Shown here in pieces: positions 3 to 6,158 of a stretch of 6,160 nucleotides of DNA. The translations under genes and the position numbers were made by a program. This DNA comes from Prasinococcaceae sp. CCMP 1430 (lineage: Eukaryota > Plantae > Prasinodermophyta): positions 1 through 6,160 of the forward strand of contig RQSC01000210.1 of assembly GCA_013416795.1 (NCBI GenBank). The letters run 5' to 3'. Position 1 is the stretch's first letter, and every line of letters begins with the position of its first letter. The notes beneath the pieces are model-generated. The model saw only the letters and a program-made list of their open reading frames with translations, was not told the origin of the DNA and did no database searches.

Positions 3-419
3 GGGTCCGACAGTCGGTTCAGGGAGGGGGAGAGGTCGGAGTGGCTCGGAGGGAGGTTCGGGAAGGGAGGTGGCAGAAGGGAGAGGAGGGACGAGTGGGT
101 CGACGGTCAAACAGGTTATTGGTAACCGCCGTTCCTCGGTGTCGTTGGTAGGGGCAGGTAGGAAGGGGAGAGGGGGGACGAGGAAGGAGGCGTCGGGAAG
201 GGGTATAGTCAGTTCGCCTCCTGCGTCCACCACGAGCTGGGAGGGGTCAACGAGATCAGGCCCGACCTCTCCCTGAGGTCTGCCTCCAAGGGGGGTCTCG
301 GAGTCGGGGTCGCGTGCAGGGGACCCCGTCGGGGGAACTGGGTCGGCCATGTTCAGTGGGGGAGGGGGTTTGTATCCGGAGGGGAGTGGTTCCAATCGGG
401 GCCGAAGGACGGGGTAGAA
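3..419 (-). other. Proline-rich low-complexity C-terminal extension of integrase, running off the window
   Basis: In-frame translation after VHVDRLAP is dominated by P, L, D and S (e.g. YKPPPPLNMADPVPPTGSP; LPEPPSEPLRPLPLPEP). This accounts for the G/A-rich plus strand here. Confidence 0.8.
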
Positions 420-3400
420 GGGGGCCAGACGGTCGACGTGGACCAGCCACTCTTTCCGGGGTTCGTATCGGGCCTTGGGTCCGCGAAGGTCAGGTCGACA
501 GGGTTTGACCTTATACACCGACTCAAAGTGCTGGTACATGATCTCATACGGTCCATACCAACCCGTCTCGCTGAACCGCGCGGTCCCCGGGAGGTAGATG
601 AGGACGAGGGCCCCTGGCTTGTATGAGGGGTTCCGGAGGGAGGATCGGGTGTTACATCGGTCCGCGATGTCATACTTGACACTGAGGAAGATGCGTGCCG
701 CAGTGGCCCACATGTCGGTCGCCTTGAGGCTCAGCCCTCGGAAGTACTCGTCAAAATCCACAGTCCCATCTGGTAGTCGGGGGGCGGCTCCACCCTCAGT
801 GAGGAAGTCGAACGCCAGCCGAGGTTCTCGGTGGTACAGCAGGTGGAAAGGGGACCACCCCGTAAAGGGATTGATGGACGTGTTCATGGCGAAGGTGGCC
901 ATAGGTAGGTCGGTGTCCCATGTGCGAGCATTTCCCTCTGCCGTCGCTCGCAGGATCTCCTCAATCGTCCGGTTGGCACGTTCCACGAGTCCTTGCGCCT
1001 GGGAACGGTACCCTGAGGTGGTGGCGTAAGAGGTCCCTAGGATCTTGCAGATTTTCTTCATGGCCTGGTTGTTGAAATGGGAGCCCTGGTCCGAGGTGAT
1101 CCGTTCCACACACCCATGCTTAGTCACGATGTGATCCAGGACGGCCTTAATGACTGACGCGGCGTCTGCCTTCTTCGTAGGTACTGCCACCACCCACTTG
1201 GTGAAGTGGTCGATCATGACTAGGATATAGCGATTCCCTCGGGCCGTGTTCCCCTGCCCGATGGGACCAATGAAGTCGATCTGCACCAGCTGAAAGGGAC
1301 GCTCGCTTGTCCAGACATGGGCCGGGGCGTGGTTGAAGGTTTTGGGCTTGGCGAACTGGCAGTTGGGACACTGTTGGATGTATTCCTTCAGGTCTCGACG
1401 CAAGGAGGGCCACCACACCCGGGTTCGCATCCAGTTGTAGACTGTAGCAAAGCCACGATGCCCAGCTAGGGTGGTGCTATGGGCCATGTGCAACACTGTC
1501 GCCCGCAGCGGCTCGGGAAGATAAGTGGCCAAGGAACACCCACCGACGTCCTCCCCGTTCATCCTTAGGAGGTCACCACCTTCGCTTTCTCGCGCGAAGT
1601 GAGTGGACTTAATAGGGAGGACCCGTCGAATGATACCCCCTTTGTCCGCGAACCAAGATCGCTCCGTGTTCAGCTTGGTCCATGCCTTGGTCTCGGCCTC
1701 CGTCGCTGGAGTGGGAAGTGGGGAGGGGTTTCGGAGCTGTTGGCAGTAGGAGTCCTCGTCTTGGGTCTTCCGGATGATGTTCTCAGCCTCCTTCACAAAG
1801 TCCACTTCGAACAGAGTTGCCTCCTCTTCTTCTTCGAGGTCGTCGTCATCAAGGGCGATGTCGACCTCCTGGGACTCCAGGAGCTGGCGTACCCGCATCT
1901 TTTGGGCCTGGGTCGGGACGGAGCCACTCTGCATGTGGTGGAGGTCGGGGTGATCTTCGGTGGGAACTCGAGGGCCAACCCGGCGGGCTTGGAGAGGTCC
2001 ATGTGGGTCGACACTGGCCTTCTTGGTCTGGGCTCTAGTCGTAACAGGGGCCATGGCAAGAGCCCCACACACCGCGAGATGTCGATTCCCGTATTCCGCC
2101 CTCAACTGAGTATCACGTCGAAGCTTCCGTCGAGAGTGGCCAGAGAGGAAATCAGGGGGAGAGGAGGGCAGGATAGGAGGTGTGGGTGGTGCCAGGTTGC
2201 TTCGTTTTCGTGGTCGTAAGCCGGCCACTCCGTGGGGTAAGGTCCGTTTAGCTGGTCTGGTCGACGGGTAGTGGGGCTTCAACCCAGTGACCATGTCTAT
2301 GCGATCCTCAATGTCTTCTCCTGGCGAGTCGGGGTCGGGGTGGCGCGAGAGGGCGTCCGCGTTACCATGGCTCTTCCCGGCTCTCCAGGTGACCACGGGT
2401 TCGAGGTCCTGGACCTTAAGGATGAGTCGTGTGAGGCGGCCCTGGGCTGGGGGGTGGCGGAAGATGGCAGGGAGGGGTTCGTGGTCCGTCACCACTGCGA
2501 AGGGTTGACCTTCGAGGTAGGGACGGTAGTGGTTGATGCTCCAGATGGCCGCGAGGCATTCCTTCTCGGTGACGCTATAGCGCTGCTCGGTGGCCGACAA
2601 CATCCGGCTGGCACAATCGACCACTCGGGGGATCCCATCCACGTCCTGTTCCAGTACCGCGCCAATGGCCCTGCCACAGGCGTCCACACAGAGGCGGAAG
2701 GGTTTGGAGAAGTCGGGGTGGTAGAGGATGAGGTTGTCTCGAAAGGCGTCCTTGATCTTCTGGAACCCCTCCTCCTGAAGGGGACCCCATTTGAACTTGT
2801 TGCCGGCCTTGCAGGGTTCGAGTATGGGGGCCATCCACATGGAGAAGTCCTTGACCACGCGTCTACAATAGGAGGCAAACCCGTGGAAGGTAGCCACCTC
2901 ATCCACCGACGCGGGCGTGGGCCAGTCGAGGATCTTGGATAGCTTCTCCGGCTGAATCCGCACCCCGTCCCGGGTGATCAGGAACCCTAGATACTTGACC
3001 TCGTGTTTGGCGAAGTGGCACTTGTTGGGCTTCACGACGATGCCAGCGTTGTGGAGACGGGCGAGGCACTCCTCCAACTGTCGTACATGCTGCTCGGGGG
3101 TCTTGGAGTAGACGCACACGTCGTCGATGTAGCACACCGCACTGACCCAGGACATTCCTGACATAACAATGTCGATGATGGTCTGGAATCCCGAGGGGGC
3201 GTTACAAAGTCCGAAGGGCATGCTGTTGAACTCAAACAGTCCCAGCCCGGGCATTTTAAAGGCCGTCTTCTCCTTGGAGGTCGCGTCGAGGGGGATTTGC
3301 CAGTACGCCGAGGTAAGATCCATGGTCGTATATAACTTCCCTTGCCCAATAGCCCGTAGGAGGTCGTCGATTCGAGGGAGGGGGTAGCGGTTCTTCTTTG

Positions 3401-6158
3401 TGATGGCGTTGAGGCGGCGGTAGTCAATGCAGAAACGCCAAGACCCGTCCGGCTTCTTCACCAAGAGGACAGGGAAGGCCCAGGGGGACTTGGACTGCTC
3501 GATGACGCCCTGATGCAACATCTTGTGGACCTCTTTCAGAATATCCCCCAACTGGTGGGTCGCGGACCGGTAGGGGGGGACGTTGATGGGGCCCGAGGTT
3601 CCCGTGTCGATGTTGAACTCGAAGGGTACGTTCACGGGGACCGTCCGCTGGTCGAGAGTCCCTACGAAGATATCTGCGTACCTCCTCAGGACGCGTCTCA
3701 TGGCTAGAGCCGACAGCTCGTCCAGGTTCTCCCACCCGACGTCCACCTGGGCTTCGATGACGGCCCACTGCTCCTCGGTCATCCCTGGAGGCAACGGTTG
3801 AGGTCCTTTCGCCATATCCTTCCGCATGTCTTCCTTGGCCGACTCCATTTCCTGAGGTGTGAGTTCAGCCGGGGTCACCCGCGTCTTGGGGTCAGGGAGC
3901 TCAATTATCCCACAGCAGACAGCGGTCGAGTCTTCTGCGACCGGGGTGAGCTGCCCGATCATCTCGCCTTCCAGCAAGACCTCCGTCCAAGGTGTGCCAT
4001 TAACGACGAGGACCTCAACGACGTTCCGGTCGGATTTGTACAGCTGATTGTGAACGTGGTATGACCCCGCATTGGCCAGGTAGGAGTGAGGTTCGAAGAG
4101 CCACCGTTGAGGAGTCTCAACTTCGGGGGAGTGGGCGACGAGGATAGGGACCTTGGTGATGGTGAACGGGTCTAGGGTCACCTTCTGGGCGGCTACAGCG
4201 TCTCGTCCCCTGTCGTAAGGTGCGTCCACCGTGGCGATAGGTTGCATCTCCGGGTGGGAGGCAGACCACACCTTCCCTTCAAACCCGCTGATCCATAGCT
4301 TGGTGCCCACAATGAAGTCCATTCCCAGGATGGGCGAGTGAAAACACTCTGGTAAGACCAGCGCTCGGACGGTGTACTTGATAGGCCCGCATCGAATTGG
4401 GATGAGGGTCACTCCCTTTGGTTGGACGAGGTCCCCATGTACGCCCTGAATAGGGGGTAGGGAGGGGTCCTTGGTGATGGTCAGGCTGTAACTCCGAGCG
4501 AAGCGTTCGGAGATCACCGACACCATAGCTCCCGTATCCAACAGGGCTCGGGCCGAGTGTTGGTTCTTGACCGTGACGGGGAGGAGCAACCGTCGTCGTT
4601 TCTCCGAAGGTATGCCGGCGACGCAGCCGCGGTGGAGGGGGTTGAGATCTGCTCCCTGCTCCTGCATCTCCTGGAGTCGTTGTCGGATCTTCCGCAGCAG
4701 TTCCCGCTGTTTTCTGGACTTCAGCTCAGCCTCCAGGGCGTCCAAGCACTTCCAGATGGTCTCCTCCTCCGAAGGGTTCTGCGGGGCCTGGTCCGTTTTG
4801 AAGAAGGCGACCTGGTCGGGTCCGAAACGAGGCCCTTCCGTTTCGTCTGGGGCGATGTTGGCTTGGCTTCGCTTGATGACGATCCCCACTGGGCAATGAT
4901 CCGAACCATCGACCCACATTCGTACAAAAGCGTCCGTCACCCGTTTCTTGAGGGACCTATCCACGAGGATGTGGTCGATGAGGAAGCCCTCTCCTTTCTC
5001 CCTGTGTCTACCTTGAGCCATCCACGAGCTGTAAACTCCTGGTAGCCCAGGGTATTTGGTGCGGAAGGTGTCGATGAGACCTAACTCTTGACCGTATCTT
5101 GCGAACGCCTTCCTTTCTTCCGCCGTGGTTCCTGGCCATGGACTCCTCGTCATGGGGTCGAGTGCGGTGTACGCATCAATCTCCAATGGGCTCGTATTGA
5201 AGTCCCCACATACTACTAGTGGTCCCTTCTTCTGTTGTTCTTGGAGGAAGGTGAAAAAGGCCTGGTCGAAGGTCTGCCTCCTCGCCTTATGAGTCGGGTG
5301 TCGCTGGTCCAACCACACTGGGACATAGACGTTGTAGATGAGGAGACCCTCGTAGCGAATGCCGATGATGCGGGGGATCTCTGTCAGAGGTCCGCCGGGG
5401 AGGTGGTCCAGGGGTAGCAGCTCCGCTGGTCTCTTTGTGAAGATGGCAACTCCTCCCTGTCCCTTCTCCTGGACGGCGTTCCAGAACTGGTGTATGAGAC
5501 CGTGTCTGGCCATGACCTGGGTCGCCCGCTTGGCTGTCTTTTCAAAGAGTCGAGTCCCCACTTTGACCTCTTGTAGACAGAGGATGTCTGGTTGCTCCTT
5601 GTCTAGGTAGCTGTCGAACTGCCTTTTTCGGAGGTACGCTCGGAGTCCGTTGACGTTGAAGCTGACGATCTTCAAATCTGAGCTCACTCCCGTTGGGCTG
5701 CACTTCTTTGTCGGTAAGTCCTGCTGTAGGGAGGAGTAACTCTGCTTCTTCGCTTGGGCCTCCATAGGGTGTAGGACCGAGACGTGTGAGGGTTGGTTCG
5801 TCATTCGAAAGAAATCGTCGAGCCCTGGTTGTACGTTTACCCCCCAGGTGAAAGCAAAACCACCGCCCTCGGTGGTCCTGGTAGAGTTGCGGATGACCGA
5901 GCGCAAGGCCATATGGCGGTCAAGATGGGCTTGATGTTGAGCGACGCTGACCTCGTCATCAAGATGCCGAGTGAGCTGTCGATCGGCATCTTCGAGTGGG
6001 CGGAGGGGAAAATGGCCTTCGGCGGTGAGGAGAGCGGCGGCACTGGTGGGAGGGAGGGGTTCATCGGGGCGGGAGGGGATGGGCCTGTTCTCTGGTTCCC
6101 ATCGGAGGGCGGCAAGGAGAACAGAAGGGATTCGGAAGGGCACGCGACCCCGAATGGA
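3..6158 (-). CDS. pol: Pol polyprotein, partial at both ends (at least 2052 aa): unassigned N-terminal segment, AP endonuclease, protease, dUTPase-like segment, RT, RNase H, linker, integrase, Pro-rich tail
   Basis: Manual codon-by-codon translation of the minus-strand frame (codon low coordinate divisible by 3) found no stop codon from 6158 to 3. All recognisable domains lie in this one frame. Confidence 0.95.
420..1781 (-). CDS. Integrase: HHCC zinc finger, DD(35)E core and GPY/F C-terminal module
   Basis: H(1479)-X6-H(1458)-X29-C(1368)-X2-C(1359); RPFQLVQIDFIGP (D 1275); ITSDQGSHF (D 1089); QGLVERANRTI (E 981, 35 residues between D and E); WDTDLP; YKPGALVLIY...WYGPYEI; VHVDRL. The N-terminal boundary is approximate. 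Confidence 0.96.
1818..1850 (-). repeat. Low-complexity acidic tract (DDDDLEEEEEA) in the RNase H-integrase linker
   Basis: Plus-strand (ctc/ttc)n and gtc/atc triplets at 1821-1850 encode E5 and D4 in the Pol frame. Confidence 0.85.
2343..2702 (-). CDS. Ty3/Gypsy-type RNase H domain
   Basis: PFRLCVDACGRAIGAVLEQ (D 2682), YSVTEKECLA (E 2559), YRPYLEG, VVTDH (D 2484), HGNADALSR (D 2355). Confidence 0.95.
2703..3620 (-). CDS. Reverse transcriptase domain (LTR-retrotransposon type, including thumb)
   Basis: FNIDTG...PPYR, SPWAFPVLLVKKPDGSWRFCIDYRRLN, YPLPRIDDLL, TMDLTSAYWQI, KTAF, MPFGLCNAP, YIDD (3120-3131), KCHF, YLG, WPTP, FKWG. Confidence 0.97.
3939..4199 (-). CDS. Possible degenerate dUTPase-like segment between protease and RT
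   Basis: VTLDPFTITKVP...VVEVLVVNGTPWTEVLLEGEMIGQL follows the pattern of trimeric dUTPase structural segments (IpPge..lvpT; v.l.N......i..GdRIAQL). The catalytic RSG and IDxDY motifs are absent. This is a by-eye resemblance only. Confidence 0.4.
4308..4589 (-). CDS. Retropepsin-type aspartic protease domain of Pol
   Basis: ARALLDTGAMVSVISERFA with the catalytic DTG (D at 4536-4538), flap-like IQGVHG, and C-terminal PILGMDF motif. Confidence 0.93.
4875..5675 (-). CDS. Exonuclease III/APE1-family AP endonuclease domain (EEP fold), in frame within Pol
   Basis: Motifs in order: LKIVSFNVNGLRA (N at 5655), [10 protein letters not shown] (E at 5568), GGVAIFTK, IYNVYVP (Y at 5325), PLVVCGDFN (D 5202, N 5196), GTTAEERKAF, GLIDTFRTKYP, GFLIDHILV (D 4974), GSDHCPV (D 4899, H 4896). 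Confidence 0.96.

What the first reader, a model, noticed from the sequence alone, without database searches (positions are those of the whole stretch)
2343..5729. Ty3/Gypsy Pol carrying a full in-frame AP endonuclease (ExoIII/APE1 family) upstream of the protease
Seen: an EEP nuclease domain (4875-5675) with all main catalytic motifs sits in the same stop-free frame as PR, RT, RH and IN, about 95 codons before the protease. Established: LTR retrotransposons integrate with a DDE integrase and normally encode no APE domain; APE-type endonucleases are the hallmark of non-LTR (LINE) elements. Here an intact-looking DD35E integrase and an intact-looking APE coexist, so APE is probably not the integration nuclease. 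Inference: protease cleavage could release it inside the particle, where it could act as a 3'-5' proofreading or end-cleaning enzyme for RT, process abasic sites from uracil or deamination damage in cDNA, or repair integration gaps. I do not know of a described Gypsy lineage with this architecture but cannot search to confirm novelty.
Basis: partly seen in the sequence, partly recalled or inferred. Interest (0 to 1): 0.92.

Follow-up and report, generated by a model that had tools for sequence, protein, structure and literature searches.

The report
Gypsy retrotransposon carrying a captured repair nuclease
A jumping gene of the Ty3/Gypsy type in a green alga carries, fused in front of its protease, an intact-looking copy of a cellular DNA-repair nuclease (ExoIII/APE1 family) whose substrate pocket looks retuned towards trimming DNA ends; I found no published description of this.

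Summary
The minus strand is one stop-free frame of 2052 codons, open at both window ends. It encodes, in order, an ExoIII/APE1-type nuclease, a retropepsin, RT, RNase H and a DD35E integrase with a GPY/F motif. The nuclease is cellular-type, not LINE-type: E=2.5e-42 to Bacillus ExoA and about 1e-41 to human APE1, against about 1e-5 to the LINE-1 endonuclease. All eight catalytic residues are present and the domain folds confidently. Three AP-site pocket residues are changed (N174→V, F266→S, W280→F). Published APE1 mutants at N174 lose AP-site cleavage, and F266A gains 3'→5' exonuclease activity.

Short contigs from three studies tile the nuclease–protease junction with no alternative joints. 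Their variants are mostly synonymous (24 of 40, p=2e-5), so this is a constrained multi-copy family, not an assembly chimera.

Raw public data hold two other retroelement lineages with a cellular-type APE. One has the APE after the integrase. The other has the order adenine methyltransferase, APE, protease. None of the 120 nearest Gypsy polyproteins has an APE. I found no published description.

LTRs, gag, expression and enzyme activity were not seen. This is a new variant of a known kind, an accessory-domain capture by an LTR element. The scan's other notes on this stretch agree.

The parts
3..6158 (-). Single stop-free reading frame of 2052 codons, open at both window ends (polyprotein interior)
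   Evidence: Zero stops against 35-101 in the other five frames; translation
5667..6158 (-). N-terminal 164 codons upstream of the nuclease; no recognisable domain and no CCHC knuckle; gag, if present, lies beyond the window
   Evidence: No Pfam hit; no Atlas relative, best score 0.76; no CCHC motif
4896..5666 (-). ExoIII/APE1-type EEP nuclease domain (aa 165-421); catalytic N168, E197, Y278, D319, N321, D395, D420, H421 intact; pocket positions V281, S378, F392 changed
   Evidence: Pfam PF03372 1.4e-23; TIGR00633 xth 182 bits against cutoff 99; PDB ExoA 2.5e-42 and APE1 about 1e-41; AF2 pLDDT 89; Foldseek TM 0.82-0.90 to APE1, ExoA and Mth0212; column analysis
4581..4895 (-). Linker of 105 codons between nuclease and protease, rich in R, E and Q; presumed site of protease processing (inferred)
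   Evidence: No Pfam domain; composition; tiled by independent contigs 4426-4676, 4632-4832 and 4795-5271
4314..4580 (-). Retropepsin-type aspartic protease (aa 527-615), DTG at aa 541-543, ILG at 610-612
   Evidence: PF13650 3.4e-12, PF13975 2.4e-10; motifs
3462..4313 (-). PR-RT inter-domain region (aa 616-899), the ordinary Gypsy PR-RT stretch with no extra domain
   Evidence: No Pfam hit; Atlas score 0.97 to unnamed eukaryote clusters, with RVT_1- and protease-bearing clusters among lower hits
2982..3461 (-). Reverse transcriptase (aa 900-1059), YIDD at 1010-1013
   Evidence: PF00078 2.7e-36; motif
2409..2789 (-). Gypsy-type RNase H (aa 1124-1250)
   Evidence: PF17919 3.2e-28, PF17917 3.7e-30
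1518..2408 (-). Long RH-IN spacer (aa 1251-1547), rich in P, L, R, D and E; no recognisable domain
   Evidence: No Pfam hit; weak Atlas hits only
1344..1517 (-). Integrase HHCC zinc-binding domain (aa 1548-1605)
   Evidence: PF17921 1.5e-17; motif
972..1304 (-). Integrase catalytic core (aa 1619-1729), D1628, D1690, E1726 (DD35E)
   Evidence: PF00665 8.8e-15; spacing of 35 computed
3..554 (-). Integrase C-terminal GPY/F motif (aa 1869-1872), then a proline-rich tail that runs off the window
   Evidence: Motif and composition; weak PF22938 hit, E=0.1

Best explanation
This is the interior of a Ty3/Gypsy-type LTR retrotransposon of a GC-rich green alga. Its Pol polyprotein has captured a cellular ExoIII/APE1-family nuclease and carries it in frame about 100 codons upstream of the protease. 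The element belongs to a multi-copy family whose coding sequence, nuclease included, evolves under purifying selection. These points are shown. Proposed mechanism (inferred): the nuclease is translated as part of Gag-Pol, is co-packaged, and is released by the protease. There it acts mainly as a 3'->5' exonuclease or 3'-end-cleaning enzyme on the reverse-transcription products, removing mismatched or blocked 3' ends at nicks and recessed ends, or trimming cDNA ends before integration. It probably does not act as a classical abasic-site endonuclease or as the integration nuclease. The DD35E integrase carries out integration.
For: Architecture and intact motifs. Cellular rather than LINE origin: PDB E=2.5e-42 (ExoA) and about 1e-41 (APE1) against about 1e-5 (L1 EN); TIGR00633 above its cutoff. 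In the tree the domain sits with plant ARP, red-algal and euglenid APEs (SH-aLRT 94). Fold: pLDDT 89, TM 0.82-0.90 to APE1, ExoA and Mth0212. Real and multi-copy: contigs of 3 studies tile 3800-5900 at 90-99% identity with several variant contigs per run and no joints. Of the variants, 24 of 40 are synonymous against 28% expected (p=2e-5); control frames give 7 and 8; within the APE 8 of 14 are synonymous (p=0.02). Exonuclease bias: all 8 catalytic residues are kept, but the N174 equivalent is V (N in 147 of 166 relatives), the F266 equivalent is S (aromatic in 160 of 166) and the W280 equivalent is F. APE1 N174A and N174D impair AP-site cleavage (bioRxiv 10.1101/2025.01.14.633034). F266A raises exonuclease rates about 20- to 50-fold and W280A about 5-fold, and pocket-less APE2 enzymes prefer exonuclease substrates (PMC5785985). 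Loss of N174 recurs in the other retroelement-borne APEs (Y in P0001, Y in P0008 and P0044), against a 10% background (p about 1e-3 for three lineages, 1e-2 for two). Precedents: DEDDy 3'-5' exonuclease ORFs in bdelloid LTR elements (PMC5408684) and capture of DNMT3 into a Gypsy Pol in Klebsormidium (PMC5890265).
Against: No LTR, gag, PBS or PPT is visible, because the ORF runs off both window ends. No RNA run holds the stretch. No single contig or read spans the whole APE-PR interval; the evidence is a tiling from different runs. No enzymatic activity, protease cleavage or packaging was tested. The changed pocket residues and the long branch (1.27 substitutions per site) could instead reflect relaxed constraint on a passenger domain. 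Mutant data come from human APE1, and V and S are not the tested A and D. The 120 nearest Gypsy polyproteins lack the domain, so the family's breadth is unknown.
Confidence: 0.55

Rival explanations
1. The domain is a classical AP endonuclease. Brought into the particle or pre-integration complex, it incises abasic sites that arise from uracil or deaminated bases in the cDNA. This would be a counter-measure to host uracilation or deamination, analogous in purpose to retroviral dUTPase.
For: Full catalytic set and xth/APE1 family membership. The R177 equivalent is kept (R286). dUTPase occurs in retroviral and LTR-element pol genes (PMC5408684 figure legend). Its position next to the protease in betaretroviruses is my own knowledge.
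Against: The N174 equivalent is V, and N174A/D impair AP-site cleavage in APE1. The abasic-sugar pocket is opened (F266->S, W280->F), and the N226 and N229 equivalents are R and W. Incising cDNA without a coupled polymerase and ligase would fragment it.
Confidence: 0.17
2. The domain is a nicking endonuclease used for entry into the genome. It would provide a second, integrase-independent, target-primed or damage-site-directed insertion route, repeating the step by which LINE ancestors acquired a cellular APE.
For: LINE endonucleases are EEP enzymes (weak similarity). The AP-site-specific contacts are lost, as expected for a relaxed nickase. Bacterial group-II-type RTs with N-terminal ExoIII exist.
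Against: The HHCC/DD35E/GPY-F integrase is fully intact in the same frame. The domain is far closer to repair enzymes than to any LINE EN (1e-42 against 1e-5). No poly(A) or TPRT-type feature can be seen in the window.
Confidence: 0.08
3. The nuclease is a recently captured passenger with no role in the element's life cycle. It is still intact by chance or by hitch-hiking in an open frame, and is drifting.
For: Long terminal branch and unusual pocket residues. The nearest Gypsy relatives lack it. Rodriguez et al. found no departure from neutrality for the extra ORFs of bdelloid elements.
Against: At most 39% identity to any of 1.84 billion representative proteins implies long independent evolution. 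Yet all eight catalytic residues and the fold are kept, and variants within the APE are synonymous-biased, 8 of 14 (p=0.02). The same kind of domain recurs in two other retroelement lineages.
Confidence: 0.15
4. The fusion is an artefact: an assembly chimera, or a host APE gene or pseudogene lying next to or nested in a Gypsy element.
For: No single read or contig spans the whole 4581-4895 linker. Only one window of the genome was available.
Against: One frame stays open across 6.1 kb, including both sides of the junction. Overlapping contigs from three studies tile the junction with no alternative joints; the loose ends in run X4 all end in GATC, as in a proximity-ligation library. Variants are synonymous-biased on both sides. 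P0008 independently shows APE followed by a retropepsin-like segment in one ORF.
Confidence: 0.03

Closest known systems
KnitGypsy-Dnmt3 of Klebsormidium nitens (de Mendoza et al. 2018, PMC5890265)
   Same: A Ty3/Gypsy Pol of a green-lineage alga that took up a cellular DNA-acting enzyme domain in frame, keeps its key residues and shows purifying selection across copies. A scan note reports a DNMT3-carrying polyprotein in this same genome (untested).
   Different: The captured domain there is a cytosine methyltransferase that acts on chromatin state. Here it is an EEP nuclease upstream of the protease.
DEDDy (DnaQ-like) 3'-5' exonuclease ORF3 of bdelloid rotifer Juno/Vesta LTR retrotransposons (Rodriguez et al. 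2017, PMC5408684)
   Same: An LTR retrotransposon that carries an accessory nuclease with 3'-5' exonuclease chemistry, acquired more than once and of untested function.
   Different: A different fold (DnaQ-like, not EEP), a separate ORF3 downstream of pol rather than an in-frame domain before the protease, and an animal host.
LINE (non-LTR) APE-type endonuclease
   Same: Same EEP superfamily, and a retroelement that recruited an APE-like nuclease.
   Different: LINE ENs are remote from this domain (E about 1e-5 against 1e-42 for repair enzymes). The LINE-type model PF14529 does not hit it. LINEs lack PR and IN and use the nuclease for target-primed reverse transcription.
Cellular ExoIII/APE1/ARP repair nucleases (TIGR00633 xth)
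   Same: Passes the family model and has all catalytic residues and the fold. It groups with plant ARP, red-algal and euglenid APEs.
   Different: Embedded in a retrotransposon polyprotein. At most 39% identical to any relative. The AP-site pocket positions N174, F266 and W280 are replaced.
Unpublished retroelement-borne APEs found here: P0001 (Logan contig L001) and P0008/P0044 (metagenome scaffolds L002/L004)
   Same: P0001 is a gag plus PR-RT-RH-IN Gypsy whose cellular-type APE is 34% identical to this one. P0008 has an APE followed by a retropepsin-like segment in one ORF. All three have lost N174.
   Different: In P0001 the APE is C-terminal, after the integrase. In L002/L004 a Dam-type adenine methyltransferase precedes the APE, and the APE groups with euglenid APEs. 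That fits the Euglena DAM-LTR elements of bioRxiv 10.64898/2026.05.21.726589, whose text mentions no nuclease.
Kuafuorterviruses with 'sporadic Exo_endo_phos' (PMC11673190)
   Same: The only published sentence I found that links an Exo_endo_phos Pfam hit to LTR-type reverse-transcribing elements.
   Different: The two supplement passages shown list Exo_endo_phos_2 (the LINE-type model) in 8-15 kb elements, one with a doubled RVT_1. That looks like nested LINEs rather than a cellular APE fused into Pol. I did not read the other 20 occurrences.

Membership tests
Ty3/Gypsy (Metaviridae) LTR retrotransposon | Pol domain order PR-RT-RH-IN with Gypsy-type RT_RNaseH domains | tested here: met
   Pfam order along one frame; 40-47% identity to Gypsy polyproteins
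Ty3/Gypsy (Metaviridae) LTR retrotransposon | Catalytic motifs DTG, YxDD, RNase H DEDD, IN HHCC and DD35E, GPY/F module | tested here: met
   All located, with an exact 35-residue D-E spacing
Ty3/Gypsy (Metaviridae) LTR retrotransposon | Long terminal repeats, target-site duplication, PBS and PPT | not testable with these tools
   The ORF runs off both window ends; no repeats or tRNA-like sites in the window; no longer contig could be retrieved
Ty3/Gypsy (Metaviridae) LTR retrotransposon | gag (capsid/nucleocapsid) upstream of pol | tested here: inconclusive
   The 164 codons upstream of the APE have no Pfam or Atlas match and no CCHC; gag may lie beyond the window
Ty3/Gypsy (Metaviridae) LTR retrotransposon | Multiple dispersed copies | tested here: met
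   Several variant contigs per run at 90-99% identity in three studies; copy number and dispersal not measured
ExoIII/APE1 (xth) AP endonuclease family | EEP fold and family-model score | tested here: met
   TIGR00633 182 bits against cutoff 99; AF2 pLDDT 89 and TM 0.82-0.90 to APE1, ExoA and Mth0212
ExoIII/APE1 (xth) AP endonuclease family | Eight catalytic and metal-binding residues (APE1 N68, E96, Y171, D210, N212, D283, D308, H309) | tested here: met
   N168, E197, Y278, D319, N321, D395, D420, H421
ExoIII/APE1 (xth) AP endonuclease family | AP-site stabilising Asn (N174) and hydrophobic abasic-sugar pocket (F266, W280) | tested here: not met
   V281, S378, F392; the family has N in 147 of 166, an aromatic in 160 of 166 and W in 150 of 166
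ExoIII/APE1 (xth) AP endonuclease family | AP endonuclease or 3'-exonuclease activity | not testable with these tools
   Needs a biochemical assay
LINE-type APE endonuclease | Closest similarity to LINE ENs (PF14529) and linkage to a LINE-type RT | tested here: not met
   L1 EN E about 1e-5 against 1e-42 for repair enzymes; no PF14529 hit; the RT is Gypsy-type

The most novel reading that the evidence does not exclude
LTR retroelements in at least two or three distant eukaryote lineages (a green alga, a euglenid-like protist and a host of unknown identity) have independently recruited cellular APE-family nucleases. They have convergently retuned them, through loss of the AP-site Asn and an opened pocket, into 3'->5' exonucleases. 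These would give a reverse-transcribing element its own proofreading or 3'-end-cleaning activity, which reverse transcriptases are classically said to lack.
Probability: 0.2. Interest if true: 0.85.

Novelty: new variant of a known kind. Interest (0 to 1): 0.62.

Why it matters
Reverse transcriptases have no proofreading, and LTR elements are thought to rely on host repair to finish and clean their cDNA. An element that carries its own ExoIII/APE1-type nuclease beside an intact integrase would be a natural test of whether 3'-end editing or repair helps retrotransposition. It also gives a living parallel to the ancient event in which LINE ancestors acquired a cellular APE. Finally, it adds a nuclease to the list of host enzymes that Gypsy elements have captured, such as DNMT3, Dam methyltransferase, dUTPase and the DEDDy exonuclease. 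The residue changes give a concrete prediction that can be tested at the bench: a strong exonuclease and a weak AP endonuclease.

Tried and rejected
- **Close relatives in contig collections:** scans of metagenome and viral contigs with the APE-PR protein found nothing.
- **Alignment-based metagenome scan:** it returned 80 loci, all ExoIII-type genes with no PR, RT or IN nearby.
- **Word-indexed protein searches on the APE:** two length ranges gave only one Gypsy fusion, P0001.
- **Exhaustive phmmer search:** the best 150 of 4563 hits contain no close relative (at most 39% identity) and no self-hit. Fusions ranked below 150 were not seen.
- **Search on RT-RNase H:** the nearest 120 Gypsy polyproteins all lack PF03372.
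- **P0022:** it shares the window's V and R at the N174 and N226 positions and clusters with the window APE. It is nevertheless a stand-alone ExoIII gene on an AT-rich contig, so the grouping is probably long-branch attraction.
- **RT tree:** it cannot say whether the window element and P0001 are sisters (SH-aLRT 54).
- **Hidden domains in the three long spacers:** none found. In particular there is no DNMT-like domain between PR and RT.
- **RNA genes and repeats:** no tRNA, Rfam family or internal repeat in the window.
- **Expression:** no RNA run holds the stretch.
- **LINE origin of the nuclease:** rejected.
- **Kuafuortervirus 'Exo_endo_phos' as prior description:** rejected for the two passages seen, which are LINE-type hits in oversized elements.
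- **Organism:** scan notes say green alga and one says Prasinoderma. The DNMT3-Gypsy note recalls Klebsormidium. I could not settle this.
Full report
**Observation**

The list of complete ORFs shows nothing long on the minus strand, because the relevant frame runs off both ends. A direct count shows that minus-strand frame 2 (window:3-6158:-) has no stop in 2052 codons. The other five frames have 35-101 stops. Pfam finds the following in that single frame:

| Domain | Residues | Window coordinates | E-value |
|---|---|---|---|
| Exo_endo_phos | aa 165-421 | 4896-5666 | 1.4e-23 |
| Retropepsin (Asp_protease_2) | aa 527-615 | 4314-4580 | 3.4e-12 |
| RVT_1 | aa 900-1059 | 2982-3461 | 2.7e-36 |
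| RT_RNaseH_2 / RT_RNaseH | aa 1124-1250 | 2409-2789 | 3.2e-28 / 3.7e-30 |
| Integrase_H2C2 | aa 1548-1605 | 1344-1517 | 1.5e-17 |
| rve | aa 1619-1717 | 1008-1304 | 8.8e-15 |

Motif positions were located by script. They are DTG (aa 541-543), YIDD (1010-1013), RNase H D1159/E1199/D1225/D1268, HHCC (1560-1600), D1628/D1690/E1726 with exactly 35 residues between the last two, and a GPY/F motif at 1869.

**What kind of nuclease**

The EEP domain is a repair-type enzyme, not a LINE endonuclease.
- Against all PDB sequences the best matches are Bacillus ExoA (2.5e-42) and human APE1 (about 1e-41). LINE-1 endonuclease scores only about 1e-5.
- It passes NCBIfam TIGR00633 (xth) at 182 bits against a cutoff of 99.
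- An AlphaFold2 model built on a 76-row alignment has mean pLDDT 89 and pTM 0.89. It superposes on APE1, ExoA and Mth0212 with TM-scores of 0.82-0.90.
- An exhaustive phmmer search of 1.84 billion representatives finds no relative above 39% identity and no self-hit, so the domain has diverged for a long time.
- In a 93-row maximum-likelihood tree it falls on the eukaryote-type side, in a clade (SH-aLRT 94) that also holds plant chloroplast-type ARP, red-algal APEs and euglenid APEs. This fits capture from a plant- or protist-type cellular gene. The branch is long (1.27) and no donor can be named.

**Active site and pocket**

I aligned the domain with 166 family members. All eight catalytic and metal-binding positions are kept: N168, E197, Y278, D319, N321, D395, D420 and H421. 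Substrate-contact positions are not kept:

| APE1 position | Window residue | Family consensus |
|---|---|---|
| N174 | V281 | N in 147 of 166 |
| H215 | P324 | H in 124 of 166 |
| N226 | R338 | N in 112 of 166 |
| N229 | W341 | N, S or T in 116 of 166 |
| F266 | S378 | aromatic in 160 of 166 |
| M270 | Q382 | R in 84, M in 29 of 166 |
| W280 | F392 | W in 150 of 166 |

R177 is kept. Published work on human APE1 shows that N174 stabilises the AP site and that N174A and N174D impair AP-site cleavage (bioRxiv 10.1101/2025.01.14.633034). F266A raises the 3'->5' exonuclease burst rate about 20-fold and the steady-state rate about 50-fold, and W280A raises the steady-state rate about 5-fold. APE2-type enzymes that lack this pocket prefer exonuclease substrates (PMC5785985). 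The inference is that this domain is a competent phosphodiesterase biased towards 3'-end or exonuclease substrates rather than AP-site incision. A first-stage note on the same stretch had flagged a remodelled pocket. The column statistics here are my own test of that idea.

**Is the fusion real?**

Six public runs from three studies hold parts of 3800-5900. I laid four of them on the stretch.
- Their Logan contigs are short. They cover the stretch at 90-99% identity, with several variant contigs over the same place, for example three over 5420-5483 in run X1. No joints were found.
- The APE-linker-PR interval is tiled by 4426-4676 (X1), 4520-4675 (X4), 4632-4832 (X3) and 4795-5271 (X2). The loose ends in X4 all end in GATC, which suggests a proximity-ligation library.
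- No single contig spans the whole linker, so this is a tiling and not a spanning read.
- Of the 40 listed substitution variants, 24 are synonymous in the ORF frame, against 28% expected (p=2e-5). The two control frames give 7 and 8. Within the APE 8 of 14 are synonymous (p=0.02), and outside it 16 of 26.

An open frame across 6.1 kb, multiple diverged copies and a synonymous excess on both sides of the junction argue strongly against an assembly chimera. They support a constrained, recently active family.

**Surroundings**

The window contains nothing except this ORF. There are no tRNAs, no Rfam families and no direct or inverted repeats. LTRs, PBS, PPT and gag therefore cannot be assessed.
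- The 164 codons upstream of the APE have no recognisable domain and no CCHC knuckle.
- The 279-residue PR-RT stretch resembles the ordinary PR-RT region of Gypsy elements (Atlas score 0.97).
- The 297-residue RH-IN spacer and the proline-rich tail after GPY/F resemble nothing known.

**Relatives**

Three findings bear on how widespread the architecture is.
1. P0001 (1318 aa, Logan contig L001) is a Gypsy element with a PEG10-type capsid ORF and PR-RT-RH-IN-SH3. It is followed by a C-terminal cellular-type APE (aa 1066-1308). It is 34% identical to the window in the APE and 40% in RT-RH.
2. P0008 (461 aa, metagenome scaffold L002) aligns through the APE and linker into the protease active site, with 'ALVDTGAQ' against 'ALLDTGAM'. 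Its tail gives sub-threshold hits to four retropepsin models at the same place, and a pairwise E=1e-6 to the window protease. L002 has a Dam-type methyltransferase ORF upstream (PF05869, 3.3e-10).
3. L004, from a second metagenome, has this methyltransferase (NPPF motif) in the same frame as the APE, and after a stop the same pre-protease segment.

The APEs of P0008 and P0044 are 58% identical and group with Euglena and Entosiphon APEs (support 99). This fits the Euglena DAM-LTR elements of a 2026 preprint whose text mentions no nuclease. A cellular APE has therefore been joined to protease-bearing retroelements at least twice.

Whether the window element and P0001 share one capture is unresolved. 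Their APEs group loosely (SH-aLRT 92) on long branches together with a stand-alone ExoIII (P0022). Their RTs are neighbours without support (SH-aLRT 54). All these retroelement-borne APEs have lost N174 (V, Y, Y), against a 10% background. The 120 nearest Gypsy polyproteins, at 45-47% identity or less in RT-RH, lack PF03372.

**Literature**

Eight full-text searches found no description of a cellular-type APE in an integrase-bearing LTR element.
- A review names the chromodomain and a DnaQ-like exonuclease as the known accessory domains of LTR elements (PMC6338049).
- Rodriguez et al. describe DEDDy exonuclease ORFs in bdelloid LTR elements (PMC5408684).
- De Mendoza et al. describe DNMT3 captured into a Klebsormidium Gypsy Pol (PMC5890265).
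- The Kuafuortervirus paper mentions sporadic Exo_endo_phos. The two supplement passages shown are LINE-type Exo_endo_phos_2 hits in oversized elements.
- Repbase, GyDB and Dfam could not be searched, so novelty is provisional.

**Mechanism**

Shown: the architecture, the family assignment, the intact catalytic core, the changed pocket, the multi-copy state and the coding constraint.

Inferred: the nuclease is made as part of Gag-Pol and released by the neighbouring protease. It then trims mismatched or blocked 3' ends of reverse-transcription products, while the DD35E integrase performs insertion.

Rivals are classical AP-site incision, a LINE-like nicking route, a drifting passenger domain, and an artefact. 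They are listed separately with their odds.

**Verdict**

This is a real and unusual feature. It is a new variant of a known kind of event, the capture of an accessory domain by an LTR retrotransposon. It carries a specific biochemical prediction that can be tested.

Noticed in passing
P0097, P0107, P0132, P0146, P0167 (proteins): Proteins of 827-961 aa, apparently bacterial, join an N-terminal ExoIII-type domain to a group-II-intron-type reverse transcriptase (RVT_N, RVT_1, GIIM, and DUF7662 in three of them). Their ExoIII domains lie within one clade (support 99) together with two other proteins, and keep N174.
   Followed up: partly
L002:1-2252 and L004:1-1650: Two scaffolds from different metagenomes carry a Dam-type adenine methyltransferase (NPPF motif), then a euglenid-like APE, then a retropepsin-like segment. 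In L004 the methyltransferase and APE share one frame. This is probably a Euglena-type DAM-LTR element with an unreported nuclease.
   Followed up: partly
L001:1654-5610: A Gypsy element (47% GC, host unknown) with a PEG10-type capsid ORF has a cellular-type APE at the C-terminus of Pol, after the integrase and an SH3 domain. This is the same kind of domain as in the window, in a different position.
   Followed up: partly
window 2409-3461 (RT-RNase H): The RT-RNase H is 45-47% identical to animal Gypsy elements (pseudoscorpion, fish, frog). It is only 31-36% identical to green-algal and charophyte chromoviruses. All 25 plant and algal rows fall outside the 71-row clade (SH-aLRT 90) that holds the window sequence. 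This could mean an old lineage or horizontal transfer.
   Followed up: partly
window 3-542 and 1518-2408: A proline-rich tail of at least 180 codons follows the integrase GPY/F motif and runs off the window. A 297-codon spacer rich in P, L, R, D and E separates RNase H from the integrase. Neither has a recognisable domain.
   Followed up: partly
same genome, other windows (scan notes s1-409010, s1-389832, s1-370968): First-stage notes report other retrotransposons of this genome with captured host domains: a thymidine kinase, a DNMT3-like methyltransferase between PR and RT, and a J-domain in a CRE-like element. If confirmed, this genome's retroelements are unusually prone to domain capture.
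   Followed up: no
window 4293, 4512, 4686, 4898 (run X4): All loose ends of contigs from run X4 stop at GATC, which suggests a DpnII/MboI proximity-ligation library rather than structural variants.
   Followed up: no
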